A stretch of 39,597 nucleotides of DNA, taken from positions 37,585 through 77,181 of the forward strand of contig DF237213.1 of the NCBI GenBank assembly GCA_000708835.1, read 5' to 3'. The translations under genes and the position numbers were made by a program. The DNA comes from Klebsormidium nitens. Taxonomy: Eukaryota > Plantae > Klebsormidiophyceae. The first letter of the stretch is position 1; each line of letters begins with the position of its first letter. Under the pieces are notes generated by a model, which did not search any database, was not told the origin of the DNA, and saw only the letters and a list, made by a program, of their open reading frames with translations. Positions 1,242-24,800 of the stretch are shown here, piece after piece.

Positions 1242-2582
1242 TCAGTTGAACAACTTCTCCCCTTTTGCAAAGGCAATATAAAACACGGCGCCCGCTGCGA
1301 CCAGCGTTGCGGACAGCCCAAACACCGCCCCCCACCCCGTGACATCCCCGCTGCCGTCCGTGGCCGTTGTGAGCACCATGCCCGCGGCCGCCACCCCGAC
1401 CACCCCCGCCAGCGTGCCCGCCGTATTGGACACGCCCATCACCACCCCCGCGTACCGCGGCGCAATGTCCATGTGGTTCACCGCAAATCCCGCTCGCGCA
1501 AATGCGCACGCCCCAAGCGCAACCGAGGAGCACGCCACGGCGCCGCTCACGGTCTGGAACCTCGTCATGAGCAGAAACGCGACCGTCGCGACGCCAAAGC
1601 CCACGGTGTTGAGTGCCTTGCGCGCGGTCAGCAGCGGGACGCGGTGGCGGCCCACCAGGCGGTCCGCGAGGACGCCCCCCGCATTGAGGGCCAGGAACAT
1701 GAGGAGGTACGGGATGGTGGCAGCGGCGCCCATGCGCGCGAGGGGCGCGTGCAGGCCCTGCTCGAAGTAGGTGGGCAGCCAGTTCATGAGCACGTAGAAC
1801 GCATAGTGGAACGTGAAGTTGTTCACCACAATCGCCCACACCGCCATGCTGCGCAGCAGGCCGCCCCACGGGATGGCCCCCGGCGCAGGCCCCTTCTGCT
1901 TGCTGGCCTCCTTGTCGTGGCCCCCCTCCCCCGCCTCTGCAGCCTGCAGCGCCTCCATCTGCAGCGCCAGTAGCGCCTCGGTGCGCCCCTGCTGCAAGGT
2001 CGCCTCGCTCCCCGGTGCCTCGCGCGCCAGCAGAGCCCACGCGCCCGCCCACGCTGCGCCGAGCGCGCCCATCAACAGAAACACAGCGCGCGGCCCCCCA
2101 GCCTGTACCACTGTGGGGATGATGAGCATGGCGGTCGCGGCGCCCATGTACATGCCGGAGGTGACGAGGGACACGGCGCGGCTCTTCTCGTGGGGGGGCG
2201 TCCACTGCGCGAGCACCGTGTGGATGGCAGGGAAGATGAGCCCCTGCGCAACGCCGATGAGCGCCCGCGCCACCACCACCGGCAGCAGCGGTGACGCACG
2301 CGCGGGCGTGAGCGCGGAGCACACCGCCCAGAGCGCAAAGGAGCAGAGCAGGACGCGGCGGCCGCCGTACTGCGCGGCCGCCCAGCCCCCCGGGATCTGG
2401 GAGAGGGCGTAGCCGTAGTAGAAGGCGGAGAGCACGCCGCCCTTGGTGGCCTGGTCCAGGTGCTGCTCAATGGCGGCCGCAGTGAAGGCCACCGAGAACG
2501 CCACGCGCTCCAGGTACGCCACCAGGGTGGCAGCAAAGCACAGCACCACCATCATGTAGCGCGGCCGCAGCGCACCCGCCAT
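1242..2582 (-). CDS. PHT4;6: MFS anion/phosphate transporter, PHT4;6/ANTR5 (Golgi) type, single exon, 446 aa
   Basis: Uninterrupted ORF (ATG 2582, TGA 1242). It has SLC17/PHT4 motifs matching plant PHT4;6: YLERVAFSVA, SQIPGGWAA, AQGLIFPAIHTVLAQWTPPHEKSR, WAIVVNNFTFHYAFYVLMNWLPTYF, RAGFAVNHMDIAPRYAGVVMGVSNTAGTLAG. Confidence 0.93.
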   Translation of the reverse strand: MAGALRPRYMMVVLCFAATLVAYLERVAFSVAFTAAAIEQHLDQATKGGVLSAFYYGYALSQIPGGWAAAQYGGRRVLLCSFALWAVCSALTPARASPLLPVVVARALIGVAQGLIFPAIHTVLAQWTPPHEKSRAVSLVTSGMYMGAATAMLIIPTVVQAGGPRAVFLLMGALGAAWAGAWALLAREAPGSEATLQQGRTEALLALQMEALQAAEAGEGGHDKEASKQKGPAPGAIPWGGLLRSMAVWAIVVNNFTFHYAFYVLMNWLPTYFEQGLHAPLARMGAAATIPYLLMFLALNAGGVLADRLVGRHRVPLLTARKALNTVGFGVATVAFLLMTRFQTVSGAVACSSVALGACAFARAGFAVNHMDIAPRYAGVVMGVSNTAGTLAGVVGVAAAGMVLTTATDGSGDVTGWGAVFGLSATLVAAGAVFYIAFAKGEKLFN

Positions 2583-3805: not shown

Positions 3806-4753
3806 NNNNNNNNNNNNNNNNNNNNNNNNNNNNNNNNNNNNNNNNNNNNNNNNNNNNNNNNNNNNNNNNNNNNNNNNNNNNNNNNNNNNNNNNNNNNNNN
3901 NNNNNNNNNNNNNNNNNNNNNNNNNNNNNNNNNNNNNNNNNNNNNNNNNNNNNNNNNNNNNNNNNNNNNNNNNNNNNNNNNNNNNNNNNNNNNNNNNNNN
4001 NNNNNNNNNNNNNNNNNNNNNNNNNNNNNNNNNNNNNNNNNNNNNNNNNNNNNNNNNNNNNNNNNNNNNNNNNNNNNNNNNNNNNNNNNNNNNNNNNNNN
4101 NNNNNNNNNNNNNNNNNNNNNNNNNNNNNNNNNNNNNNNNNNNNNNNNNNNNNNNNNNNNNNNNNNNNNNNNNNNNNNNNNNNNNNNNNNNNNNNNNNNN
4201 NNNNNNNNNNNNNNNNNNNNNNNNNNNNNNNNNNNNNNNNNNNNNNNNNNNNNNNNNNNNNNNNNNNNNNNNNNNNNNNNNNNNNNNNNNNNNNNNNNNN
4301 NNNNNNNNNNNNNNNNNNNNNNNNNNNNNNNNNNNNNNNNNNNNNNNNNNNNNNNNNNNNNNNNNNNNNNNNNNNNNNNNNNNNNNNNNNNNNNNNNNNN
4401 NNNNNNNNNNNNNNNNNNNNNNNNNNNNNNNNNNNNNNNNNNNNNNNNNNNNNNNNNNNNNNNNNNNNNNNNNNNNNNNNNNNNNNNNNNNNNNNNNNNN
4501 NNNNNNNNNNNNNNNNNNNNNNNNNNNNNNNNNNNNNNNNNNNNNNNNNNNNNNNNNNNNNNNNNNNNNNNNNNNNNNNNNNNNNNNNNNNNNNNNNNNN
4601 NNNNNNNNNNNNNNNNNNNNNNNNNNNNNNNNNNNNNNNNNNNNNNNNNNNNNNNNNNNNNNNNNNNNNNNNNNNNNNNNNNNNNNNNNNNNNNNNNNNN
4701 NNNNNNNNNNNNNNNNNNNNNNNNNNNNNNNNNNNNNNNNNNNNNNNNNNNNN
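3806..4753. other. Assembly gap (948 N)
   Basis: Run of n characters. Confidence 1.
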
Positions 4754-8334: not shown

Positions 8335-11300
8335 TCAGATTATTGTTATTGAAGTCCGTATTTTCCTCTCTGTCATCATTGTTAGGATGGTAGCGGCCGC
8401 CCTTCCGGCGGCGCCCGGTCCGCCGAGCAGGGCGCTCAGGCGGCGGTAGCCGTCCAGCACGGTGTCCCGCGCGCCGCGCTGGTTGCGCAGCAGCCCGAGG
8501 GCGGCCGCTGCCACGTCCTCGGGTCGGGCCGCGTCCTGGATGAACTCGGGCACCAGCTGCGCAGCAAGGCACGCTAAAGTGGGCGGGGCGACTTCGGCGG
8601 ACGTCACAAAGCCAACACGAGATTGCGGGGCATCAGGCCGGTAGATAAGCTCAAGTCACCGCTCTCAGTAATCCACTGAATAGGACGTGCAATGCACTGA
8701 ACAGTAGGGAAGGCAGGACATCAGATGCAACAACGGCTTTGGGCGTGCAGTGAATGTCGCTCCGCTCACCGGCTCTTCTAGGATCAGGTTGACGAGCGAG
8801 ATGTGCGGGACGCTGAAGTGGAACAGCGTGCGCGCCAGCCACGCAGTCACGGCATCGATGCGATACACCACCACCTGCGGGACCTGCGCAGGGGCAGAGC
8901 AATGAGTGTCGTCAGCACCTCGTCCCTTAAGCGGACTAGCAGAACGGCCTGGCCCACCGTTCACTCGGACATCTTGCGATACAGACTTTCATCTTCTGTC
9001 TCTACTTGCATCAAGTCTCCTCAAGATCCGATTTTGCAGGATGCTTCAATCGGCGACCAGAGGCCCCGTAAAGGAGCTGCTACTCTTCTGGCTCCCAGTT
9101 GGCGGGGGCAGGTGCGGTACCTGGAAGAGCGCGAGCTCCAGGTTGACGGTCCCGGACTTGGTAAGGGCCAGGTCCGCGGCCGCGAGCACCGTGTGAGAGT
9201 CGCCCTGCGCAACACGGTATGCGGAGCAGGCACGCATGTCAGAGGGGCGCCGCGCATCAGGGGCGTGTGTACCAAATGGGCCGGCTGGCGTGATACGAGA
9301 ATAGGGCGATCCTCCGTTGGCGAGGAGACCTTCCGTTCGATCTTTCGAAGAGAAGACACCAGCCCACAGCATGGCCAAACCAGTGGCTTGTTTTGATGCA
9401 GCAGCGGCAAATGTCGACCTACTTATATCCTGAAGAGGCTGGAAACTAAGCTAAAAAGAGAGAGCCAACTGCTAAGAAAGTAACGTACCTTCCAAATGGT
9501 TGCTTCAATTGAGTATGATTGCAGGGACTCTCTGATCGCGTTCTCTAAGTCCGAAGATACCACCGGTATGAAGAAGCGGAGGGGACAGTCCCCGGAACTG
9601 CAGATGACAACGTCTGGTTTCAGAGAAGACATAGTGCACTCCCACTTCAAGTCGCTTGGTTGAAACGTTTGAGCATCCACTAAGTTCGTTCCCATTAAAC
9701 TGCAACGGGCCCACTAGTGTCCTTTTCGAGGATCTGTAAGTCAAAAGCTTAAGGCTGCTCGAAAAGTCGCCAAAATGCCAAACGGATCAGCTAGACATGG
9801 CAATATTGAAACCCATCATTAGCAGGATTTGCGGGTAAGTCCGTTTGACAGGGTTTTTGGGGCCGGGATCCCGTAAGAACGTCGAAGCGTTCCGATCACA
9901 GCGAAGAACCGATCAGAAACGACCTGTGCGCTTTTCTCAGAATCTCCCCAGAGGATGTCAAAAGATTCGGTGTAGCATGACGTACTACTTTATACAAAGC
10001 CAGTTGCTTATCTTGCCCTTATCTGTTCGTAAGATTGCCTGCTGAAAAGGTGAAAGCAATCAAGCAAAACACGCCCAAAGTATTTTTGTCTTTGCAACGC
10101 TCCTTGACAAACTCAGTTCTGGCAAGAACGGGTCAAAGCAACGGTTCGTTCAAGGCCTTCGACTGTCAATCTAGGCCCAACTGGCCCTATGGCTGTGCCC
10201 CACCGTCCCTGCCCCTTACCTGGCCCACTCTTCCTGCACTGCCTGAGCTGCGCGCGCGAGAACCGGCCACACGTGGCGCACCTCCTGCGGCCGGGACGCT
10301 GGCAGCAGCGCCACCACCAGCGTGCCCGCACTCACGCCCAGCGCAGCGCGGGCAGCTGGGCGGTCAGGCTTGGAGGCAACGGCGTCCAGGAGCGGATGGC
10401 CCACCATTTGAACCGAGCCCCCAGCCCCTTGGAAGTAGCCAGCCTGTACTCAAAAGGACAGCGCACTGTATTGGAGAGGAGACTGAGAGTAATCTGTTTG
10501 GCCCGGTGCTCCTGTTTAAGTAGAAAGGGGGTCACTTGACTGCCCCAACCTATGAGAGACCTCTAAACTCCACACATCTTGACGAAGCTGTCTTCATGAG
10601 AAGACTTTAAGGTGAGCCGCACCTCTCTAGGGTAGGTGCACAAGATGGCGTCGGAGATGGCACACAGCGCCGGCGTGCGCGCCTCATTCCAGAGCCACTC
10701 GTTGGGGGGCACGTAGTACACCACCGGGCAGCCATACTGGCGCTTGAGGTAGCGGCCAAACGGGATGTTGACCCCCGGATAGTCAATAAGAATGACGAGG
10801 TCGGGCGGCTGGTCCCGCAGGAAGGCGCGCACTTGGGCCTGGAGGCGCAGCGTGGGGAGGACCAGGGGCAGCGCCTCCAGCAGCCCAATGGAGCTCAGGC
10901 CGCGGTTGTCGCCTGCACACCGAGGGGCACATATGAGGACAAAACAAGAGCGACCGTTCCAGCCATGAAGAACTGTCCTGGGGAAGGCTTCCCAGAACCC
11001 TGACTGCACATGTGCGTACACAATGACAGATCAGGGCCCCCATCTTCGCCAGGATCTCCAAAACCTTCCGCACACAAGTCTCGCATTCTGTACTCAAGTG
11101 CTTGCCTCCGAGGCAATCCCAGCAAGGATTGCATGGCGCTTACCTACCAGCGTGACTCCCGCCTCCTCAATGCCTCCACCTCCCAGCGCGCACACCGTGA
11201 CCTCGTGCCCCGCTGCCTGGGCTTGCTTCCGCACCTCGTGGACCAGGCCCGTGGCGTGCATATCGCCTGAAACATCCCCGGTGCTGATGAACACTCGAAT

Positions 11301-11687
11301 TGGCCTCCCCCTGCTCTCGTTCCTGCCTGGACTCCGCAGGTGGGACTCATCTTGCACCAGCACATGTTCCCAAGCTGCTGTGTCTGAATCTCCAGCGACA
11401 GCAGTAGCTGAACACGTCCTTCTGCATTGTCCACTCACGCGCTGGCGTGACCAAGCTGGTCGGGGAACAAGATTGTCACTGCAGAGAGAGGTACGAGAAG
11501 GTCTGGTTGGCAGACTGGTGCTGCAAGCTGGAGGTTTTCTGCAACGAATTGGATAAGCTCGGGGGAAGTAACTGATTGGGCTCGAAGTGTTAAAACTGTC
11601 TGATAATGTGACTGCAGCCTGTTTGCCAATGCTGACTGACTGGAGCTTGGACGGGGGCAGAAAGAGCTCAGCCACGCCAGCCATCAT
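8335..11687 (-). CDS. lpxB: Lipid A disaccharide synthase (GT19) with ~130-aa N-terminal organelle-targeting-like extension, ~528 aa, 7 exons
   Basis: Exons 11687-11144, 10912-10623, 10443-10220, 9597-9489, 9204-9121, 8883-8770, 8556-8335; all GT-AG and in phase. LpxB motifs: VFISTGDVSGD, SIGLLEAL, LIDYPGVN, YYVPPNEWLW, VGHPLLD, LLPASRPQE, ADLALTKSGTVNLELAL, VPQVVVYR, ISLVNLI, LVPEFIQ. Confidence 0.95.
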
Positions 11688-12439: not shown

Positions 12440-15400
12440 ATGGCTAGCTCGGGGCAAAAAATCCTGTCCCGATGCAGCCTAGCGTGCCTCCTTCTCTGCT
12501 TGTTTGGGCGCCCCGCTGCAGGTTTTGATATCTGGTCCGAAAAGCAGCCAGCGGTGGAATTGCCCAACATAACTGCACTCAATCAGACTGGGACTTTGAA
12601 TGCAACTATGGCAGGAAATAGAACCGCAAAGGCCAAGGTTGGAGTGCTGAGTTGGCTTGTAGCTGAAGGGGTGCTGGATCCAGCTTGGGTGAGTGAGCAG
12701 GACTCTGTGCACGACATGCCCGTAACGGAGCTGGACAAGACAACCAAGATGCGGATAGAGAAGTACATACGGGAGAGCAACAAGACCTTGGCCGATTTGG
12801 CAGATGTGGAGAAGCGGGAGAGCTACATTGAGGGCATTCTCAAGAAGATGAACATCGAGGAGGCAGAGAAAGGGTCGGGCCGCTTCAATCAGACCATGGA
12901 GAAGCAGGAAGGCAAGCTGGAGACAGTGGCCCGGGTTGGGAAGCAGCATAAGCAGGGAATAGCGAAGAACGAATCGGAAGCAGTCACCCTCGGCACAGTG
13001 AAAGATCAGGAAGCTGCAAATTCGGGATCCCATTTAGGGTTTTCTCGTGGAGAGGACAGCGGGAAAGCAGGCGTGCAAGAGTCAGCTCAAGAGATTGAGG
13101 AGCGTGCCGCAAAGGCAGAAGCAGACAAGAAGGCCGAATCGGAAAGTAGAGAGGAAGAGGGTGATGGCAAGGAGGACGTTCCGCGCCTTATCGACTCTCA
13201 GGACAACGAGTACGTCATCAGCAACCCAGGCAAAGGCTTGAATCAGATGCAGCTGCAGCAGGACCTGACTCTCATCTCTGACATTGTCAAGGTGAGCTAA
13301 TGTCAAGTCCTGAATTGCCTCTGAAGCAAGATGTTTTGATTCCATGCCTGGACTCTGTGCTGCGCCCCTGTGGTACCTCTGACTTTCTGCCCCCAAGTGC
13401 CAAAGCCGGCACTGACGGAGTTCTCCAGCTCTACCCTGCTGCCCCACCGCAAAGCCCGCAGTGTGGTCTCAGCCCTGGCTCTTGCTGCAGGTCATAGTGG
13501 CGGCGGCTCTGGGGGGCCTGCTGTGCGGTCTGCTGGGCCAGCCGGTGTTGCTGGGGTACATTGCTGCGGGCATGCTGGTGGGGCCAGGCGGCCTGGGCCT
13601 GGTGCACGAGCTGGTGCAAGTAGAGACGCTCGCGCAGTTTGGCGTGGTGTTCCTGCTGTTTGCGCTGGGGGTGGAGTTCAGCATCGTGAAGATGCAGGGG
13701 GTCCAGGCGGTGGCCATCGGGGGGGGCACGCTGCAGATCGTGGTGGCCATGGTGCTGGGGGGCATGCTGGGGTCTACCGTCACTCAGGGGGTATTCGTAG
13801 GTGAGCAACGGGCGGCACTGCTTGAACATCCGTTCATTAGGACGAGGTCGCTTGTATTGGCGTCTTTACTTGGCTGTCAAAGTTGGAAAGTTTCTTCGCC
13901 TTGGGCCTGAAATCGCTTGGCAGCTCACTGCGTCTTGTGTCTTGTGCCGCGCAGGGGCGTTTCTGTCCATGTCCTCCACCACTGTGGTCATCAAGTGCCT
14001 GATGGACACGAGTACGGTCAACACTGAACACGGCCAGGTGGGCAAAGAATCCTACTGTCTAAGGCTGGCAAGGCCTCAAGGTTTTAGATGGGACCAGCCT
14101 GCTTCTCTGTACCCCACAAAGAACCGGGTGTGTTGCAAGTGAAGTCCACCGACCTTCCAAGAAGTCATGGTGAAACCTTTCCACTTTCGTCGAAACCACA
14201 GATACTGCTAGGCACATTATTGCTCGTGTCGTTGCTCCCACCCTTCAGCTCGTTCTTCGCCTGTACTTCAACTCCCCCCCGGCGCGTGCGCTGCAGATCA
14301 TGCTCGGCACGCTCATCCTCCAAGATTGCGCCCTGGGCCTGCTCCTGGCCGTCCTGCCGGCGCTGGCCTCCAAGGACAACAACCCGCTGGCCATCGCGGC
14401 GTCCCTCACGCGCGAGGGCGTCCTGCTGCTGGGCTTTGTAGGGATGGCGTGGCTGGTAGCGCGCCTCTTTGTGCCGCGCTTCCTGCGCATGCTGTCCGCG
14501 CTCGCGCTGCACGACAACGAGCTGTACCAGCTGGGCGTGGTCGCCATTTGCCTCTGCGTCGCGCTCCTCTCCGAGTTCCTGGGGCTCAGCCTCGAGGTCG
14601 GCGCCTTTGTGGCGGGGCTCATGCTCTCAGGTGAGGCCGCAGGTTGGTCAATACGAGGAGAATCAGGTTGTTGATGTGCCCACCCCGATGAGCCTCTGGA
14701 GACGGGACAAACAAGCATCGGTTGTGCTAACGGGTGAGGACAGATGCAAGGACGCCGGAGATGCGAGCACTGCCTGTCTAACTTCAGGACCGAGTACAGT
14801 ACGCTTATGACATAGCTGTCGGGTCCAGCTTCTGATAAGCTCGACACGGAAAAGGCAGCTACTCGAACGGGTTACCTGTTGTCTCCTGATTGATGAACGG
14901 GACAGCCGATGACATTTTCAATGGACCACTTTGCAGTAATTTTGAAGCAAGTCGGACAGTGGCGAACATGCGGCAAAAGAGTAATCATGTTAAGGGGAAT
15001 TTTGCGTCGACCAGGCCGCAAGCCAGCGTTTATCAGCTCGTTGAAAGTTCTGTAGCAAGGCGGTTCGTTTCAACAGCTCGCATGCATTTCCGTGGATACT
15101 CGGGACGATGGCGACCGTCTCCGACCTGCTTCGACGTTCCATTGTGCGCCGTGCAGGGTCGTCGTTCAGCGAGCGCACGCTGCACCAGGTGGAGCCGGTG
15201 CGCAACATCTTTGCGGCGCTGTTTTTGGCGAGCGTGGGCATGGTGATGCACCCGCTGTTTTTGTGGGAGCACATCGACGTGCTGCTCACCGCCACCGCCG
15301 TCGTCTTCTTCGGCAAGACCATCCTGGCCACTGTCATCGTGCGCGCCTTCAGCTACGACTGGGGCACCGCGCTCAGCGTGGGCATCGCGCTCGCGCAGAT

Positions 15401-15773
15401 CGGCGAGTTTTCGTTCGTGCTGTTGAGCAGGGCGCAGGCGCTGGGGCTCGTGTCGAGGAGCCTGTACCTCCTGCTCATGGGGACCACGGCGCTGAGCCTC
15501 GTGCTCACGCCCTTCGCGTTCAAGATCGTACGGCACATAGTTCCACTAGAACAGCAGAATAGAGACAGACGGACGTCGAGAGGGGAAGCCTCCGACACGC
15601 GGGATTTGGTTCTCAGACGAAGTTTGGGGGAGGCGGGGTCAGGGCTGCCGCATGCGCTGCAGGTTGAGGTGGAGGAGGATGACGTGGGAAGAAGCCGAGA
15701 CGATCGAGCACATGGTGTCTCAAATCACTCGCCGGCAATGCAGTACAGAAAAACACATAAACAGCAGGTCTAA
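12440..15773 (+). CDS. KEA4/5/6: K+ efflux antiporter (CPA2), endomembrane KEA4/5/6 clade, ~731 aa, 5 exons
   Basis: Exons 12440-13291, 13491-13800, 13955-14037, 14297-14630, 15157-15773; in phase. Signal peptide, then LQQDLTLISD, VQVETLAQFGVVFLLFALGVEFS, GAFLSMSST, GTLILQDCALGLL, NELYQL, QVEPVRNIFAALFLAS, LAQIGEFSFVLLSRA, GTTALSL. Confidence 0.95.
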
Positions 15774-16662: not shown

Positions 16663-17316
16663 CTACTCTTTCTTTGCCTCTGAGAAATATGCATCTAGAT
16701 CACTGTTCAGCTGCTCGGCTGACGGCGCTGGCGCCCCTCTTCCCCGGCCCCTGCCCCTCCCGCGCACTGCGCCCCTGCCCCTGCCTCCACCCCCCCGGCC
16801 TACAGCCGCTGCTCCCCTGGCTGCCCGCCCTCCTCCCCTGCCCACCACTATGCCTGTCTTTCCCCCCCTCCTGGCTGCCAGGCCGGGCCGCTTGGGCAGT
16901 GCCAGCCCAAAGCCTGCAGCAACAGCAGCGGCGCCGTCCTTGCGACGCACCGGGATCACCTTCTGCCCCAGGCTGCCCCTTCCACGCCCCCGGCTGCCGC
17001 CCCCCCTGACCGCTCCACCATCAATCGGAGCAGGTGCGTGTCCTAGCTCTTCAGGCGCCCCTGCTGCCCCTTTCCGTTTTGCTGTCAGCTTGTCATACCG
17101 GCCCTGCGTGGCCCGGTCTGCTGCCTCCGCTCGCCGGATGGCGAGGCCCGCAGCTTTGGCCTTCTCCCGCTGCTGAGCCAGCTGCTTGAACCTTTCATCA
17201 AGCGTCGACGGCGCAGCAGCCTTTTCATTGCTGCCAAGGACAAACCGTGGGCCGTCATCTTCTGTAACTGAAGCCTGCCCACCACCCTGTCGTCCCTTTC
17301 CTTTTCGTCGAGCCAT
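16663..17316 (-). CDS. RGG-rich RNA-binding protein with C-terminal UAP56-binding/FoP-type motif (CHTOP/UIF/ALY-like), 217 aa, single exon
   Basis: ATG 17316 to stop 16663. It has an N-terminal STLDERF motif, many RGG/RGR repeats and a C-terminal SAEQLNSDLDAYF, typical of CHTOP/ALYREF C-terminal UBM motifs. Confidence 0.78.
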   Translation of the reverse strand: MARRKGKGRQGGGQASVTEDDGPRFVLGSNEKAAAPSTLDERFKQLAQQREKAKAAGLAIRRAEAADRATQGRYDKLTAKRKGAAGAPEELGHAPAPIDGGAVRGGGSRGRGRGSLGQKVIPVRRKDGAAAVAAGFGLALPKRPGLAARRGGKTGIVVGRGGGRAARGAAAVGRGGGGRGRGAVRGRGRGRGRGAPAPSAEQLNSDLDAYFSEAKKE

Positions 17317-18397: not shown

Positions 18398-18875
18398 CGA
18401 AAGTTGAAGCAAACTTCCTGCGCATGAGCTGACCGGCGCAGGCATTCTCGTCAGAGGTTACTTGCAAACCTTCAAACTTACGTTCCATTACTGGTGCAGC
18501 AGTGGTCGGGGGAGAGGGGCGGGAAGCGAGGCGCCGTATTTGATGTGGACAGATTTCAGGGTGTTCTAGGGGAGCCGCTCTGCTTGACAAGGCCTTCGAA
18601 AACTGTTCAACCGTCGCTCTCCCGGGCACTTACGTCAAGAAGCGTGATGCAAACCTCAGCAAAACCGTCGTGAGTTAACCTTGCCTTTGCAAATGAAGTC
18701 GATCATGTTGCTGCTGGCTGTGCGTGCATTTCTTGGCAAAATGGCGCCAGCACCTGCTGGGCTCTTACTAGATGCTAGCTAGTGGTAAGCTCTCCAAGCT
18801 GGCATACAAAGCTGGCGTACAAACATCAAAGTAAGTGATATGATTTTCCCTACTGGGATCTGATGTGACTCCACA

Positions 18876-21800
18876 ATGATGGAGCACGGCGGCAGTTCTT
18901 CGAGGTTGCGCTCTTCCCAGAGTGGTGGCTTTCGCGCTGGTTCCAAGGCCACCCATTATGGACATGCTCCTGGTGTCAGCTCGCTGTCAGCCACCTCGGG
19001 GCGGCCCAGTCAGATAGGCGATAGGGAATTGAGCAAGCATGCTCCAATGTCTGCAGCCAGCTCGGCAAAGGCTTCACAACCTGCTGCTTCCAGCTCTGGC
19101 AGTCTTTCTTTCGAGCAAACAGCGGTGGCGTGGACGGATATCGAAGCTGGGGAGGCTGTCGGCTCAGAGGGGCCTGCGCAGAGCATCGCACAGAGTATGA
19201 GGAGAATGTTTCCCCCTGCACAACCACCCGCTCCGGACAACCAACCTGAACTGTTACAGTCAGCTGTGAGTCGGAGGCCAGCCGGGAATGGGGAGGAGTT
19301 TATCATGAGTCCATCGCCACTAGCCATCGCACTAGCCAAAAAAGGCTCCTACTCAAGCCCAGCCGACACACAACCAACAGAGGTAGCAAGCTCTAAGAAA
19401 GGCTCAGGAGCTGAGCAGAGGTCGCTGGCGCCTGCTGGTAGCAGCAGGAGGGCACGCTCAATGCGTGAGGCCAGCAACTTGAAGTTGTCTATTGGGGCTG
19501 ACCATCAAAGCATGACTACTCAGAATGACCGACAAGAACCTTCAAAGGCGTTCAGTCAGAAGAGATCGCTGCTAGATGCACCACTCGCTCCCACTATTCC
19601 TGCCCCCACACATTCGTCGGAGTGGCCCTCGTTGCATTCTGGTGCCAGGCCAAGATCGAACAGTGGTCTTTCAGAGCGCCATGTTGCACCACCAAGTGCG
19701 AGTCGGCATGGTACAGCAGCGTCGTCTTCAGCAGAGCACCCCACGTTGCAGCAGGGTCCCCCTCAGCTGCCATCTGCAGCCCGCGGCTTTGCTCCTGGAG
19801 AGCAAGGAAGACCAGGCCCCATGCACGGGATGGTTGCGGTGCCCCCCATCTTGGCGGAGTGGGTGACCTCCCCCGATGCTGCGGATGTGCTGGCCAAGAT
19901 CCTGGGAGTGGCACGCGCACGCCTGCGGGGCGTGGAGCAGAACGCTGTGCGGTTTGAAGCAGAGGAGGAAGAGGCGGTGCAAGAAGCGCAGGGGCTGCTG
20001 CAGGTGAGACCAAGCTCAAGTAGATAGAGTCAGAGAAGTTACGCAATCTTTCCAAGAGCAGCTTTCTCCTCAAAGTCGGAGCGTCTCAATCAAGTTTGGC
20101 AAACCGCTTGCACTGCTCTTTACTGCATTATGCTTGCTCCTAGTAATGGTCGCATTTGGATGTGGAGCACGCCATTTTTAATATGTGGGGGGTTAGCCCT
20201 TCGCCCGCAGGCTAGATGTGGAGCATGCCAATAAGAACTGTACAGACACCGGTGGTGAAGGTGGTCGGATGAAAGGCTCAGTTCCGGTCGTTTCCTGTCT
20301 GCTGTGTAGAGCCATTTGGATCACAAGGCGGGCGTGGAGGAGAAGCGGCGTGTAAAGCGCGAGCTGGAGCTGATTGAGCAGGAGTTCAGGGACGGGCTGC
20401 GCTGTGAATTCCAGGTCCCCCTGCAAGCGCTGCCCCATGTGTTTGGCGTAAATGGCAGCAACCTGGCGCAGGTGAGATGTTGTTGGGGGGTGGTTGCATT
20501 TGAACCTGGAGGATGGGTACTGAGGTTCTCTGCTTGCATACTCCAAACGATTGAGTGTAATCACAGTTTGACATAGGTTCATTCTTTCCAAACAAGTGGC
20601 ATTGTTTGCACGCTCCAAACTTTCACAATGCTAAGTGAAGTGCCTATCATCAGTCTCCTGCCTTGGGGCAATATTGTTGGGGAGCTGATTCTGAGGCCCC
20701 TGTTGTTGTCTGGCCCCCCCAGGTGCAGGCGGAGTGCGGGGTGGAGCGCGTGCTGGTGGACTCTGACGAGAGCATGGTGCGCATCGTGGGGCGCTCCAGG
20801 GAGGCGGTGGCCGCGGCGCGCTCCCGCCTGGAGTACGACGTGTGGTGCCTGCCAACGGCGCGCGACCTCTTGCAGAGCAGTGGCAACAAGATCGAGGCCC
20901 TGCTGGAGCGCGTGCGCACCAAGAACAAGCTGGCGGAGGCAGAGGTGCAGGAGGACGAACAAGGCCCCTGGGTAAGAGGCGACCTGGCACCGTCATATAT
21001 GCAATCAATTCAGCTACGCTTGGGGCTGAGCCCTCTGCAGTGAAGCTTCGGATTCCCAGTGTCTCTGGCCTCGCTGATGGCCTTCGTTTTGCTGGTGCAA
21101 CTCCTGTCCCCCTTGACGGCGGGAACAGAAAATCTGCTGAGTTTGCCGAATTTTACAATCCCTGCTGGCTAGAAGATGACCTGAGCGGGGTGGTGGCCTG
21201 CAGGTGAGCCTGGTGGGCTGCAAGGCGGTGTTGGCGGAGGCAGCCCGTGTGGTCGAGGGCCAGCTGCAGCTATTCGAGATGATGCAAGCAGAGGTATGGT
21301 GTCCTTGTTCCACCATTGACGGACTCTCGCCTTCCCCATCTCAAATGACAGTTGGCGGTCATGCAAGCACTTTCTGGAATGGGCGACTTTCTTTGACAAC
21401 ATGTTAGAAGCCTGTGATACTTCCAGTTATTGCCGGGCAGCTGTTTTCGACCTTTTTTGGGCCAATTCGTGCTTCTGTTCTTGTGGTTTTAGGCAACTTC
21501 TCACATTTGGTGTTTCTTGTGCAGGCCGCTGAAGTTGCTGACGTCAGCGAGGAGCAGGTACAGCGGGTCAGCCGCACCTGGGGAGTGCAGCCCCGCTCAG
21601 GACCCCCTGCAGGCGGGCCGCCCTTCTTTGCGGCCCCTGCCCGCTTGCCGGCCAACACAGCAAGAGCCCCATCAACCGCGCAGTCCCGGGAGCCAAGGGC
21701 GGCAGCACAGGCAACGACTGGCGAGTGGGAGGACATTGAACCCCCATTGATGGGTCCAGATCAGAAGCATGCATCGGGATGGGGGTCGCAGACTGGGAGC

Positions 21801-24800
21801 CCGGGGCAAGGGCCGGCGGGGAGCGCAGCACGTCCGACTCAACTTGCGCGGTTACAGCCAAGAACGGGAGCAGGAGCGGCAATGGGTGCAACCTCCAATG
21901 GGGTCGTGGACGGGACCGCGGGTGTTGCGCCCACAGGGTGGGGCCAAGCTGCAGCAGGTGGTCATCCTGGGTCGACAACTGGGCACCGGACTGGACCTGC
22001 ACTCGGACAGGGTTCCCTGCCAGCTGTCAGCCAGCCAGCGCGTGAGGCAAGCGGTCCGACTCAAGTGGCGGGAGGGTCTGGTGGGTGGGGAGAGGTGCCG
22101 GCGTTCCAGCATGATGTTCGAGGAGGGGCAGAGCCACGGATCGTAACCCGAAGGCCCCTCGCGGCGACCCCGAATCGGCTGGCCGCCAGCGTGCTGGCCA
22201 CTGTTGTGAGCTCACGCCAGAAGGAGGGGGCACAGATCAGCAGGGGCAGAGGGGGTCTGGGGGCATCTCCGGAGAAGGGCGGTCGAGCAAACAGGAGCGG
22301 GGCGGAGGGAGAGATGAAAGGACGGGCGACCGGGGGTCAGATTGCGGCAGCGCAAGGAGCGGAGCAAGATTATCAGGGGAGCAGCCTGGGCGCGCGTGAT
22401 GAAGAGCCCCCTGGCGCAACTGGCTGGGGGGACACGCCAGCTGCAAACAGTGGGGGACTGCAAGTCGAGCGGGGCAGGGGGCAGATCAAGGAGGCGGCAG
22501 CCGAGAGCGGGTTCTGGACGCTGGGGTCCCCTCCAGGCGCCACCCCCGCTCCCCCGCTGGACCAGGAATCGGTCAAGAGCACCTGGGACGCTGCCTGGCC
22601 CAACTCTGCCGTCGCAGGGCGCACCAACTGGGGGCAGCAGCGGGGGCCCGAGGGCCAGACGATCCTGGAAGGGAGGGGATCCGCCCAGAGAAGCGGCCCG
22701 CCCGGTCCTGCCGCCCCCGCGCCCCTCCCTGGGCCTGCGGCCAGCTCTGAGCATGCCTCCTCGGGGTGGAGAGGGCAGCCGCGCTCGGCCGCCTCAGGGT
22801 CTCTCAGCTCGTCTCAGCCGGGGGCCTCCATCAGCAGGGGCGAGCCCAGCACCGCAAGCTCGGGGCCTGCCCCGCGCCGCAGAGTGGAGAGGATCAACGC
22901 CAACGCGGTGCCGCCCCCTGACGTGTCCACTCTTCTGCGCGCTCCGTCCGGCAAAGCGGGCGTTCGGCCCGTTCTTGCTGCTCCCTCGTCGGCTCCTGCT
23001 GCGGCGGAGCCACTCATCAGCAGGAGCGCGGCCGCTGGGGCTCCTAGCAGGCAGCCAGGTGCTGCGCCGCCAGCCAAGGCCCCCGCGTACAGGCCGGAGG
23101 ATGCGGTCGTTCTCGTGACTGCCAGCGAGGGGAGCGGCTCGGGGCGGGTACCTCCCCAGAGCAGGCCTCTCATCGGCCGGCCTAGCACCACCCGGTCTCA
23201 GCCGCAGGCACCCAAGGCGTCTCCTGTGGTAAGCCTGGAACGGGAAGCTCCCCGGACACCTGCGCAAGACGTGCGGTCCGCCAGCCTGCCCAAGGCTTCC
23301 GGTGCCTCCAAAGGCAGCGTGTCGGAGCGGCCTGAGCGGAAGGCGCTGCTGCGGGCGGTGTCATCGGCGTCGAGCACAGGCAGCACCAGCAACTCGAAGC
23401 TGGCAAACAGGGGACAGGGGGAGGTCGCGGGACGGGGGAACGGGCCAGGACAGGTGGCGCCCCTGGGAGCCTTCCAAGAGGATACGCAAGAAGGGGCGAA
23501 CAAGGAGGCCCGACGCTTGGAGCGCACGCAGGAGGAGGCGTCCCTGCCAGAGGGGAATCAGGAACAGGAGGGAGAGCAAAAGATGGTCAGTGGAAGTGCC
23601 GAAGGGGCGCACGATCCTATGTCAGCGAGGGTGCACGCTGGGGCGAAACAAGAAGCTGAGGGTAGAGGCGCTTCCGTGAAGTCGGTACGGGGGAGCGAAG
23701 TGGAGCCGCTGGGCCCGGCAGAAGTGGCGGAAGCGCGGGATGCAGCACCGGATGCTCCAGGGAGAGGTGAGAGAACCGAGCGGACGGAGGCTGCCACACT
23801 ACGTGGCCAGGACGGAGAGGAGGGGGCGGTCGCTGGCAGCAGCGACAGCGATGGAGTGCAGGCAGTCGAGCAAGGTGAGGCCGCGACCCCCGCAGGTGGC
23901 ACCCCTGCAGGAGACAAGGACAAGAGCGCCACAGGAGGGCCAACGAGCGAGTGCGGAGCCGAGGAGCAGCAACCAGCGGCGGATGCAAAGGAACCGGTAG
24001 AACTGACCCCCAGGGGCAGTGCGCCAGACTCGGTATCCCCGGGCTTTGCTACGGGTACATTTCCGGCTTCTGCGGCTGCGCAGCTACTAAAGCGGTCCAC
24101 GCCCCTTCGTGCTGAGGCACCGGAGTTTGTGGCGGGGGCCGCACGAGCGTGGTCCCCCCTTCGAGCTGAGGCCCAAGTCTTTGTTGCAGGCGTGGGGCTG
24201 GTGGAGGACCCTGCCGCATCGCACGGGGCCTCAAGAAATGCAGCTTGCCCAGGCCCGAAGGCAGGAAACGAGAGCAAGGCAAAGGACGAGGCGAGAGGAG
24301 AGATCAACGGGCGGAGCGGGGGTGGGCAGACCCGCGCGCGGAAGTGGGCCTCAGAGACGAGCGAAGAGGAGCAGCGTTTTGAAGAGGGGCATGCTGCGCA
24401 GCACGGGGCCCCGCAGGGAGAAGGACCGACGAGAAACGGCCACGAAGAGGTTGCTCGGGAGGAAGCCGCTTCTGTAAGTCAGCAGGGACGCGTTGCTGGC
24501 GGGCCTTCGGGGTGGGGCGACGCGAAGAAGCCGGAGGCGGAGGAGAAACCGTCAAAATGGGGGACAGCGAATCATGTGAACGGAGGCCTGGAGGAGGTGG
24601 AGGACCACCCGTTTGCGCAGAGGACGGGGCAGGGCGCGCGGCCGGAATCCGGCATGCGGCCGTGGTCAGACGAGGCGGCGGCTCCGGCTGCGCCGCGCGG
24701 CAAGGGCGCGGGCAGCGGTAGCTGGGTGAGCGACGACTCGGGGAGCGTGCGCAGCGTGGGCGTGGACGTGGGCCGCTGGGCGGAGGAGGCGGCCATCAGC

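What the first reader, a model, noticed from the sequence alone, without database searches (positions are those of the whole stretch)
8335..11687. Cyanobacterial-type LpxB with a plastid-transit-like peptide: possible lipid A-type pathway in the chloroplast envelope
Seen: a spliced nuclear lpxB with a ~130-aa extension whose first ~98 aa are S/T/P/R-rich and acid-poor, ending CRRTCSA-TAVA. From recall, diagnostic segments (SIGLLEALPLVLPTLRLQ, LIDYPGVN, YYVPPNEWLW, TKSGTVNLELALFQVPQVVVYR) resemble cyanobacterial LpxB more than the proteobacterial-type Arabidopsis LpxB. Established: the Arabidopsis lipid A enzymes are mostly mitochondrial (Li et al. 2011). Inference: this is an endosymbiotic gene-transfer copy that may make a lipid A-like disaccharide in the plastid, paralleling the plastid peptidoglycan retained in streptophyte algae and mosses.
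Basis: partly seen in the sequence, partly recalled or inferred. Interest (0 to 1): 0.82.

Follow-up and report, generated by a model that had tools for sequence, protein, structure and literature searches.

The report
Cyanobacterial-like LpxB gene in Klebsormidium
A streptophyte alga (Klebsormidium nitens) carries an intron-bearing nuclear gene for the lipid A disaccharide synthase LpxB; its nearest bacterial relatives are cyanobacterial, but whether the enzyme works in the chloroplast is not shown.

Summary
Window 8335-11687 (minus strand) is a 7-exon, GT-AG, in-frame lpxB gene of 528 codons. Exons 2-7 and the end of exon 1 are 100 % identical to the public Klebsormidium nitens protein "lipid-A-disaccharide synthase". 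That public model starts 142 residues too late.

The "cyanobacterial-type" reading is largely supported. Orthologues run from prasinophytes to bryophytes and gymnosperms, and none was found in an angiosperm. In a careful tree they form one clade (100/99) with Cyanobacteria and an unnamed bacterial group. Grouping them with proteobacterial LpxB is rejected (AU p = 1e-5). The order within the clade is unresolved (plants + unnamed group 68 %, plants + Cyanobacteria 31 %), so transfer from the plastid ancestor is plausible, not proven.

The "plastid transit peptide" is the weak part. All eukaryotic orthologues carry 53-184-aa N-terminal extensions. In Klebsormidium, codons ~14-100 of the extension have intron-like GC3 (0.3-0.5 against 0.76-0.93), and nothing related was found. 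Plastid and mitochondrial targeting cannot be told apart here.

A plastid lipid A pathway remains untested. I could not obtain the Arabidopsis-type LpxB or any LpxA/C/D from this alga. Overall this is a known enzyme family and an already annotated gene, with an interesting lineage distribution that I did not find described in the literature library I searched.

The parts
11295..11687 (-). Exon 1, 5' part: 131-codon N-terminal extension read from ATG 11687 (second ATG at 11684). Putative organelle-targeting peptide whose coding status is uncertain.
   Evidence: The frame is open from 11744, with 42/20000 shuffles open. GC3 is 0.49 overall and 0.29-0.50 over codons 14-100. There is no in-frame Met between codons 3 and 142. 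Frame-preserving GT..CAG pairs exist inside it, e.g. 11640..11422.
11144..11294 (-). Exon 1, 3' part: start of the LpxB fold (strand beta-1 and the GDxSGD loop). It ends in phase 1 at a GTAAGC donor.
   Evidence: Pfam LpxB profile positions 1-45. GC3 is 0.76. The public model P0175 starts at Met143 inside this part. The motif is conserved in all orthologues.
10913..11143 (-). Intron 1 (231 nt, phase 1)
   Evidence: GT..AG. Same column and phase as Marchantia intron 2.
10623..10912 (-). Exon 2 (290 nt), the largest conserved piece
   Evidence: PF02684 4.6e-17 and TIGR00215 1.5e-15. 100 % identical to P0175 residues 41-136.
10444..10622 (-). Intron 2 (179 nt, phase 0)
   Evidence: shared with Marchantia.
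10220..10443 (-). Exon 3 (224 nt)
   Evidence: PF02684 2.3e-11. 100 % identical to P0175 residues 137-210. Holds the S186/R187 equivalents of E. coli S200/R201.
9598..10219 (-). Intron 3 (622 nt, phase 2)
   Evidence: Same phase as a Marchantia intron two alignment columns away, in a variable loop.
9489..9597 (-). Exon 4 (109 nt), a variable region with no family hit of its own
   Evidence: 100 % identical to P0175 residues 212-247. GC3 is 0.64.
9205..9488 (-). Intron 4 (284 nt, phase 0)
   Evidence: shared with Marchantia.
9121..9204 (-). Exon 5 (84 nt)
   Evidence: PF02684 9e-6. 100 % identical to P0175 residues 248-275.
8884..9120 (-). Intron 5 (237 nt, phase 0)
   Evidence: shared with Marchantia.
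8770..8883 (-). Exon 6 (114 nt)
   Evidence: PF02684 8.8e-7. 100 % identical to P0175 residues 276-313. Holds N307, the equivalent of E. coli N316.
8557..8769 (-). Intron 6 (213 nt, phase 0)
   Evidence: shared with Marchantia.
8335..8556 (-). Exon 7 (222 nt) with the stop codon at 8335-8337
   Evidence: 100 % identical to P0175 residues 314-386. Holds E317, the equivalent of E. coli E326.

Best explanation
The window comes from the streptophyte alga Klebsormidium nitens. Positions 8335-11687 (minus strand) hold a genuine, old nuclear gene for a GT19 lipid-A-disaccharide synthase (LpxB). It belongs to a clade found across Viridiplantae (prasinophytes, Mesostigma, Klebsormidium, Zygnematophyceae, liverworts, mosses, gymnosperms) and not found in angiosperms. 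Its nearest bacterial relatives are cyanobacterial LpxB and one unnamed bacterial group, not proteobacterial LpxB. Shown: the gene structure, family membership, fold, intact invariant residues, the clade, and vertical descent (introns shared with Marchantia). Inferred: the protein is an active UDP-2,3-diacylglucosamine : lipid X glycosyltransferase made in the cytosol and imported into an organelle by an N-terminal extension. The plastid is somewhat more likely than the mitochondrion, given the gene's ancestry and a distribution that resembles that of plastid peptidoglycan genes. The gene most likely entered the green lineage early from the cyanobacterial plastid ancestor or a bacterium with a closely related LpxB.
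For: Gene model and family. P0175 scores 249 bits on the TIGR00215 equivalog model against a cut-off of 190. Fold: the AlphaFold model has pLDDT 94.5, and the top Foldseek hits are E. coli LpxB 5W8X/5W8N/5W8S (E ~1e-16). Residues: the equivalents of E. coli D98, S200, R201, N316 and E326 are invariant. Relatives: the exhaustive search with exon 2 and the word search with the Marchantia orthologue return green-lineage proteins first, and after them every named hit is cyanobacterial. All 80 best loci in 185,579 named bacterial genomes are cyanobacterial at 41-46 % identity, though that scan used a pattern drawn from this clade. Tree: the clade of Cyanobacteria, group X and plants gets 100/99, plants alone 95/87, and plants with proteobacteria is rejected at p-AU 1.4e-5. 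Nuclear and old: 5 of 6 introns share column and phase with Marchantia, and the sixth has the same phase two columns away. The streptophyte branching follows the species tree. Extension: all full-length eukaryotic members have 53-184 extra N-terminal residues, while bacteria have 0-15. The cyanobacterial relative sits in an lpxC-fabZ-lpxA-lpxB cluster, so the relatives are true lipid A genes.
Against: The branching order among plants, Cyanobacteria and group X is unresolved (68/31/<1 % of bootstraps). Early-branching cyanobacteria, red algae, glaucophytes, named alphaproteobacteria and the Arabidopsis enzyme are not in the tree. The Klebsormidium extension has intron-like GC3 over codons 14-100, five Cys residues in TGCAG-type contexts, and possible in-frame introns. 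Exon 1 found no relatives, and the public model omits the extension. Its net charge of +10 is not plastid-specific (PMC12531127). No LpxA/C/D partner is shown for any compartment of this alga. The only experimentally located plant lipid A enzymes that I know of are mitochondrial (Li et al. 2011, from memory; that paper is not in the library).
Confidence: 0.6

Rival explanations
1. Same enzyme, but targeted to mitochondria. It would serve the mitochondrial lipid A-like pathway known from Arabidopsis, and its cyanobacterial-like ancestry would say nothing about location. In lineages that have it, it may be the only LpxB, later replaced in angiosperms by the other type.
For: The extension is net +10 and Arg-rich. 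Positive charge is the mitochondrial tendency, and the two presequence classes are poorly separated outside eudicots (PMC12531127). Plant lpx genes known so far are described as mitochondrion-derived and mitochondrial (PMC4198247; Li et al. 2011 from memory). I found no evidence of a second LpxB in Klebsormidium, although this was not testable.
Against: The extension is proline-rich (11 %) with a low helical hydrophobic moment (maximum 0.40) and no obvious amphipathic helix. The ancestry is cyanobacterial-like. The presence/absence pattern (gymnosperms and bryophytes yes, angiosperms no) resembles that of plastid peptidoglycan genes (from knowledge).
Confidence: 0.3
2. The gene reached the green lineage by horizontal transfer from a non-photosynthetic bacterium of the 'group X' kind, not from the plastid ancestor.
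For: Plants + group X is the favoured arrangement (68 % of bootstraps against 31 % for plants + Cyanobacteria). Group X genes lie in lipid A clusters next to an MsbA-like exporter or sigma-54 activators, so group X is probably not an oxygenic cyanobacterium. Non-cyanobacterial origins have been argued for other plastid envelope and wall enzymes (Sato, PMC8227023, title and abstract only).
Against: Support for plants + X is weak (UFBoot 68, SH-aLRT 17). Group X is unnamed and could be a non-photosynthetic member of Cyanobacteriota. Deep-branching cyanobacteria such as Gloeomargarita are missing, and their absence alone could push plants outside the sampled crown group. By identity, Cyanobacteria (40-41 %) are at least as close as group X (38-39 %).
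Confidence: 0.3
3. The protein keeps the LpxB fold but has a different job, such as another glycolipid glycosyltransfer or a structural, non-catalytic role in an organellar complex.
For: There are precedents for Lpx-like folds reused in organelles. Chlamydomonas plastid RNA polymerase subunit PEPS6 has an LpxC fold (bioRxiv 10.64898/2026.06.23.732312). A GT-B subunit of Tetrahymena mitochondrial complex I is the next-best structural match after E. coli LpxB. Canonical lipid A has never been isolated from plants (PMC3087551).
Against: All family-invariant residues are kept across hundreds of millions of years. The protein passes the strict equivalog model. There are no extra domains.
Confidence: 0.1
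4. Bacterial contamination of the assembly, or a dead pseudogene.
For: None beyond the bacterial affinity of the family.
Against: There are six spliceosomal introns at positions shared with Marchantia. The frame is intact, and codon bias is typical of the flanking algal genes. Orthologues follow the plant species tree.
Confidence: 0.01

Closest known systems
Green-lineage orthologues, e.g. Marchantia polymorpha 'lipid-A-disaccharide synthase' (BFI39916.1 / PTQ36673.1, MARPO_0062s0088), plus Physcomitrium, Sphagnum, Taxus, Spirogloea, Mesostigma and Cymbomonas
   Same: 51-56 % identity for the streptophytes and Mesostigma, 47 % for Cymbomonas. Same clade (95/87). N-terminal extensions throughout. 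Five or six of the six introns are shared with Marchantia.
   Different: Marchantia has four more introns, one of which separates the extension into its own exon 1. The Klebsormidium extension is contiguous with the fold and shows no sequence similarity to the others.
Cyanobacterial LpxB (e.g. Nostocales HT-58-2, locus L005, in the lpxC-fabZ-lpxA-lpxB cluster)
   Same: 40-46 % identity over the full length. Shared motifs such as YY(I/V)(P/A)P(N/Q/E)EW. Same 100/99 clade.
   Different: The cyanobacterial gene has no introns and no N-terminal extension and lies in an operon. The plant clade is not nested inside the sampled cyanobacteria.
E. coli LpxB (PDB 5W8S/5W8N/5W8X)
   Same: Same family (GT19, GT-B fold). 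It is the best structural match, and the invariant residues D98, S200, R201, N316 and E326 are kept.
   Different: Only 27 % identity. It falls in a distant proteobacterial clade, and grouping it with plants is rejected.
Arabidopsis AtLpxB and the mitochondrial lipid A-like pathway (Li et al. 2011, from memory; Wang & Wu 2014, PMC4198247)
   Same: A nuclear plant gene of the same enzyme family with an organellar presequence.
   Different: By indirect evidence it belongs to a different lineage. No angiosperm protein ranks among the 120 best relatives of the Marchantia orthologue, whereas about 100 cyanobacterial proteins do. I could not obtain the sequence, so this was not tested in a tree.
Plastid peptidoglycan synthesis genes of streptophyte algae, bryophytes and some gymnosperms (from knowledge)
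   Same: A similar pattern of bacterial envelope genes kept in early-diverging green lineages and absent from angiosperms.
   Different: For peptidoglycan, both the product and its plastid location have been demonstrated. Neither has been shown here.

Membership tests
LpxB / CAZy GT19 lipid-A-disaccharide synthase | Match to the family profiles over the whole length | tested here: met
   PF02684 hits are colinear over the exons. P0175 scores 249.4 bits on TIGR00215 against a curated cut-off of 190.25, far above the related family TIGR03492 (26.6 bits).
LpxB / CAZy GT19 lipid-A-disaccharide synthase | GT-B two-domain fold like the solved E. coli enzyme | tested here: met
   The model has pLDDT 94.5. 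Foldseek ranks 1-3 are 5W8X/5W8N/5W8S with E ~1e-16 and TM ~0.6.
LpxB / CAZy GT19 lipid-A-disaccharide synthase | Family-invariant active-site and UDP-site residues | tested here: met
   The equivalents of E. coli D98, S200, R201, N316 and E326 are present in all 14 aligned sequences. The N-terminal GDxSGD motif is present in exon 1. Which of these residues are catalytic rests on my memory of the literature.
LpxB / CAZy GT19 lipid-A-disaccharide synthase | Catalyses UDP-2,3-diacyl-GlcN + lipid X -> disaccharide-1-phosphate | not testable with these tools
   This needs an enzyme assay or complementation.
Lipid A (Raetz-type) pathway in the same compartment | LpxA, LpxC, LpxD and a pyrophosphatase that supply the substrates | not tested
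   No other lipid A gene lies in the window.
Endosymbiotic gene transfer from the cyanobacterial plastid ancestor | The eukaryotic clade is sister to, or nested in, Cyanobacteria | tested here: inconclusive
   The clade with Cyanobacteria and group X gets 100/99. Within it, plants + X gets 68 % and plants + Cyanobacteria 31 %. The AU test of plants + Cyanobacteria did not finish.
Endosymbiotic gene transfer from the cyanobacterial plastid ancestor | Nuclear gene with spliceosomal introns, inherited vertically | tested here: met
   Six GT-AG introns, 5-6 of them shared with Marchantia. The gene tree follows streptophyte phylogeny.
Endosymbiotic gene transfer from the cyanobacterial plastid ancestor | Present across Archaeplastida | tested here: inconclusive
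   It is broad in Viridiplantae, including a Tara Oceans picoalga with a CCT-domain neighbour. A red-algal GT19 transcript is reported (PMC12843361), but its type is unknown. No glaucophyte was seen.
Chloroplast transit peptide | N-terminal extension relative to bacterial homologues | tested here: met
   129-131 aa as read. All eukaryotic orthologues have 53-184 aa and bacteria have 0-15.
Chloroplast transit peptide | The extension is really translated as read | tested here: inconclusive
   The frame is open (42/20000 by chance), but GC3 is 0.29-0.50 over codons 14-100, in-frame intron candidates exist, the public model omits it, and no homologue of exon 1 was found.
Chloroplast transit peptide | Directs import into plastids rather than mitochondria | not testable with these tools
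   No targeting predictor was available. The composition (S/T 23 %, P 11 %, net +10, low amphipathicity) is ambiguous, and the two classes are poorly separated outside eudicots (PMC12531127).
Arabidopsis-type (mitochondrial) plant LpxB | Groups with At2g04560 orthologues or alphaproteobacteria | tested here: inconclusive
   The sequence could not be obtained (one search returned only bacteria). Indirectly not met: there are no angiosperms among the relatives, and grouping with the proteobacterial rows (E. coli, Pseudomonas, P0053, P0133) is rejected.

The most novel reading that the evidence does not exclude
Green algae, bryophytes and gymnosperms may retain a plastid-located, cyanobacterial-style short lipid A pathway ending at the LpxB disaccharide. 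It would have been lost in angiosperms together with plastid peptidoglycan. That would make the chloroplast envelope of these lineages a closer relic of the Gram-negative outer membrane than is currently thought.
Probability: 0.15. Interest if true: 0.8.

Novelty: new member of a known kind. Interest (0 to 1): 0.5.

Why it matters
Plants are known to carry lipid A genes, but the pathway characterised so far is mitochondrial and of non-cyanobacterial origin. Histochemical claims of lipid A in chloroplasts (Armstrong et al. 2006, cited in PMC3087551) have never had a genetic basis. A second, cyanobacterial-like LpxB lineage is present in genetically tractable plants (Marchantia, Physcomitrium) and absent from angiosperms. 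That provides a concrete gene to localise and knock out, so the question becomes testable. On the practical side, the public Klebsormidium gene model is truncated at its N-terminus and should be revised.

Tried and rejected
- **Bacterial genome scan with exon 2 alone.** 332 pattern matches, none confirmed.
- **Word search with exon 1 to find related extensions.** Nothing at 100-317 aa. This blank says nothing about longer proteins.
- **Contig of a close relative.** P0001 (85 % identity in exon 2) lies on Logan contigs L082/L083, which end 142 bp upstream of exon 2 and do not reach exon 1.
- **Attempt to fetch the Arabidopsis-type LpxB.** I used a profile led by a 781-aa protein, hoping to exclude ordinary-length bacterial proteins. 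The length limit did not act that way, and only bacteria of about 380 aa came back. They were still useful as named outgroups.
- **AU test of plants + Cyanobacteria.** It did not finish after about 860 s. I replaced it with bootstrap split counts.
- **Literature.** I found no paper in the library describing this plant LpxB lineage or GT19 counts in bryophytes. The organelle atlas supplements have no entry. Li et al. 2011 is not held.
- **Rejected readings.** Contamination or a pseudogene (shared introns rule these out), and a proteobacterial affinity (AU test).
Full report
**What is in the sequence.** The window has about 55-60 % GC, a 948-N scaffold gap, and spliced genes. On the minus strand between 11687 and 8335 I defined seven exons: 11687-11144, 10912-10623, 10443-10220, 9597-9489, 9204-9121, 8883-8770 and 8556-8335. 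Every intron is GT..AG, and the phases (1, 0, 2, 0, 0, 0) are consistent. The total is 1587 nt, i.e. 528 codons plus the stop. The exon translations match Pfam LpxB (PF02684) and NCBIfam TIGR00215 in colinear order across the profile. Exon 2 aligns with the solved E. coli LpxB.

**Organism and independent confirmation of the splice model.** The public protein P0175, "lipid-A-disaccharide synthase [Klebsormidium nitens]" (386 aa), is 100 % identical to exons 2-7 and to the last 39 residues of exon 1. The piece lengths add up exactly: 39+1+96+74+1+36+28+38+73. So the window is K. nitens, the six splice junctions are confirmed, and P0175 served as a referenced stand-in for the spliced product. 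The public model starts at an internal Met (residue 143 of my exon 1). That cuts off the conserved beta-1 strand and the 'STGDVSGD' motif, which every homologue has. Its match to TIGR00215 accordingly starts at profile position 21. The public N-terminus is therefore too short.

**Family membership.**
- P0175 passes the curated lpxB equivalog cut-off (249 against 190 bits) and scores far lower on the related family TIGR03492.
- An AlphaFold2 model built on a 37-sequence alignment is confident (pLDDT 94.5).
- Its best structural matches are the three E. coli LpxB entries (E ~1e-16, TM ~0.6). The large rmsd is, from my memory of that work, due to the domain-swapped crystal dimer.
- The equivalents of E. 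coli D98, S200, R201, N316 and E326 are invariant in plant, cyanobacterial, group X and other bacterial sequences.
- Nothing suggests loss of catalysis.

**Who the relatives are.** An exhaustive phmmer search of 1.84 billion representatives with exon 2 gave a top tier at 58-85 % identity, then a tier at about 45-50 %.
- The named members of the top tier are all Viridiplantae: Spirogloea, Marchantia, Sphagnum, Cymbomonas and Mesostigma. Prasinoderma, at 51 % identity, and two Closterium species are further green-lineage hits.
- A word search with the full-length Marchantia orthologue listed liverworts, mosses, gymnosperms (Taxus, Cryptomeria, Ginkgo), Klebsormidium, Spirogloea, Cymbomonas and Mesostigma. 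After these, every named hit was cyanobacterial, at 41-46 % identity over about 80 % of the query.
- No angiosperm appears in that list. An angiosperm orthologue would be expected to outrank the cyanobacteria, so the angiosperm LpxB is either absent from this lineage or far more divergent.
- One unnamed member lies on Tara Oceans contigs beside WD40, multicopper-oxidase and CCT-domain genes. It is a green picoalga, and the gene there has no introns.
- A scan of one genome for each of 185,579 bacterial and archaeal species returned 599 confirmed matches. The best 80 were all Cyanobacteria at 41-46 % identity. The scan pattern came from this clade, so that result is biased.
- In Nostocales HT-58-2 the relative lies in an Omp85/Toc75-like - lpxC - fabZ - lpxA - lpxB cluster, so these are true lipid A genes.

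**Phylogeny.** I built a careful IQ-TREE (LG+C20+F+G4, PMSF) of 75 rows by 386 columns. The rows were 20 Viridiplantae, 23 Cyanobacteria (19 named and 4 unnamed that group with them), 5 members of the unnamed "group X", 9 named outgroups and 18 unnamed others. The named outgroups were E. coli, Pseudomonas, Acidobacteria, Binatota, Deltaproteobacteria, Syntrophobacterales, Omnitrophica, Gemmatimonadota and Spirochaetes.

| Grouping | UFBoot / SH-aLRT |
|---|---|
| Cyanobacteria + group X + Viridiplantae | 100 / 99 |
| Cyanobacteria | 100 / 96 |
| Viridiplantae | 95 / 87 |
| Group X | 100 / 100 |

- Within streptophytes the order is Klebsormidium, Spirogloea, then embryophytes, as in the species tree.
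- Holding plants together with the proteobacterial rows costs 74.5 log-likelihood units and is rejected (p-AU 1.4e-5).
- The order among the three groups is not resolved. Plants + X appears in 68 % of bootstrap trees, plants + Cyanobacteria in 31 %, and Cyanobacteria + X in 0.6 %.
- Group X members lie in bacterial lipid A clusters. One cluster has LpxD, ACP, KAS, an MsbA-like exporter, LpxB and LpxA. Another lies on NCBI MAG GCA_016188575.1 next to two sigma-54 activators. Oxygenic cyanobacteria lack sigma-54 (from knowledge), so group X is probably something else.
- "Cyanobacterial-type" is therefore a fair description of the sequence. "Inherited from the plastid ancestor" is the leading hypothesis but is not demonstrated. 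The tree has no early-branching cyanobacteria, red algae or glaucophytes.

**An old nuclear gene.** I mapped the public Marchantia protein onto its genomic locus and found 10 introns. Five of the six Klebsormidium introns fall in the same alignment column with the same phase. The sixth has the same phase two columns away, in a variable loop. This excludes contamination and supports vertical descent since before the split of Klebsormidiophyceae and land plants.

**The N-terminal extension.** Points in favour of a targeting peptide:
- As read from ATG 11687, the extension is 131 aa. Its first 98 aa are S 16 %, T 7 %, P 11 % and R 10 %, with only 3 acidic residues, net charge +10 and no strong amphipathic helix.
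- Every full-length eukaryotic orthologue starts with Met and has 53-184 extra residues, mostly net basic. Cyanobacteria, group X and E. coli have 0-15.
- In Marchantia the extension is encoded by its own first exon.
- An organelle-targeting role for the family is thus well supported.

Points against trusting the Klebsormidium sequence as read:
- GC3 is 0.58-0.71 around the ATG, 0.29-0.50 over codons ~14-100, and rises again from codon ~102. Introns and the 5' flank have 0.47-0.59, and the conserved exons have 0.76-0.93.
- The stretch contains five Cys codons in TGCAG-like contexts and several frame-preserving GT..CAG pairs of typical intron size. One example is 11640..11422, which would leave a 58-aa extension.
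- Exon 1 found no relative, and the contig from a close relative does not reach it.
- The frame is nonetheless open far beyond chance (42 of 20,000 shuffles), and no in-frame Met lies between codons 3 and 142.
- I therefore accept that an extension exists but treat its exact sequence as unverified, including the cleavage-like 'CRRTCSA-TAVA'.

Plastid and mitochondrial targeting cannot be separated here. No predictor was available, and Raval et al. 2025 (PMC12531127) report that the charge difference between the two presequence classes is most evident in eudicots.

**Function and pathway.** The window holds no other lipid A gene. The neighbours are an MFS transporter and a spliced Na+/H+ exchanger. 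I could not examine the rest of the genome.
- Opiyo et al. 2010 (PMC3087551) note that cyanobacteria have only lpxA, C, D and B. They concluded that all or some plant lpx genes came from other bacteria.
- Wang & Wu 2014 (PMC4198247) list the plant lpxA, lpxB, lpxD and kdtA as mitochondrion-derived.
- Neither paper mentions a cyanobacterial-like plant LpxB, and my searches of the held library found no paper that does.
- Lpx-like folds are sometimes reused in organelles. Examples are the LpxC-fold subunit PEPS6 of the Chlamydomonas plastid RNA polymerase and a GT-B subunit of Tetrahymena complex I among my structural hits. A non-lipid A role therefore cannot be excluded, although the intact invariant residues argue for catalysis.

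**Verdict.** The cyanobacterial-like affinity is supported and the proteobacterial alternative is rejected. The endosymbiotic origin is plausible but unresolved. The transit peptide and the plastid pathway remain hypotheses. The gene itself is already annotated under the right name, with a truncated start. What appears to be undescribed is the lineage-level picture: a second LpxB type across non-angiosperm green plants.

All full-length analyses used the public protein P0175, which lacks the first 142 residues.

Noticed in passing
window 11259-11687 (minus strand), versus public protein P0175: The public K. nitens gene model starts at an internal Met (codon 143). It lacks the conserved beta-1/GDxSGD start of the LpxB fold as well as the extension, so the annotation is N-terminally truncated.
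   Followed up: yes
window 3806-4753: A scaffold gap of 948 N.
   Followed up: no
window 1242-2582 (minus strand): A single long ORF of 446 aa with a full-length Major Facilitator Superfamily match (PF07690, 1.1e-47). It looks like an intronless transporter gene.
   Followed up: partly
window ~13461-15770 (plus strand): Two ORF pieces match the start (profile 1-108) and a later part (245-370) of the Na+/H+ exchanger family PF00999. This is a spliced antiporter gene divergent from lpxB, with about 1.8 kb between the two starts.
   Followed up: partly
window 21414-27645 (plus strand): Very long ORFs (1222 aa and 689 aa) in a region of 68-71 % GC with strong GC and AT skew and no Pfam match. This could be low-complexity coding sequence or a repeat-derived open frame.
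   Followed up: no
window 18871-18963 (plus strand): ARAGORN calls a 93-nt tRNA-Arg (anticodon GCG), unusually long and overlapping the start of ORF 18876-20027. Rfam found no tRNA at gathering threshold, so the call is doubtful.
   Followed up: no
window 16663-17316 (minus strand): The C-terminus of this ORF weakly matches the FoP_duplication domain (PF13865, 24.2 bits against a cut-off of 24.6).
   Followed up: no
L005 450-7131 (Nostocales cyanobacterium HT-58-2): An Omp85 gene that scores best on the chloroplast Toc75/IAP75 model lies directly upstream of lpxC-fabZ-lpxA-lpxB. The ancestor-like form of the plastid import channel and the lipid A genes are therefore neighbours in this cyanobacterium.
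   Followed up: partly
Foldseek hits 4-6 of the P0175 model (PDB 8b6f_A0, 7tgh_T1, 8gym_T1): A subunit of Tetrahymena mitochondrial complex I has a GT-B fold that matches the LpxB model with TM ~0.7. It is a possible example of an LpxB-like protein kept as a structural subunit in a mitochondrion.
   Followed up: no
L089 10001-13932 (NCBI MAG GCA_016188575.1, contig JACPHN010000126.1) and the P0016 contig: An unnamed bacterial group ('group X') has an LpxB as close to the plant clade as cyanobacterial LpxB is. The genes lie in LpxB-LpxD-KAS-ACP or MsbA-LpxB-LpxA clusters next to sigma-54 activators. Its taxonomy is unknown to me and matters for identifying the donor.
   Followed up: partly
L082 / L083 (Logan SRR23617210, SRR20627847): Short genomic contigs from an organism with 85 % identity to Klebsormidium in exon 2 and the same exon 2 / exon 3 layout. 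This is probably another member of Klebsormidiophyceae.
   Followed up: partly
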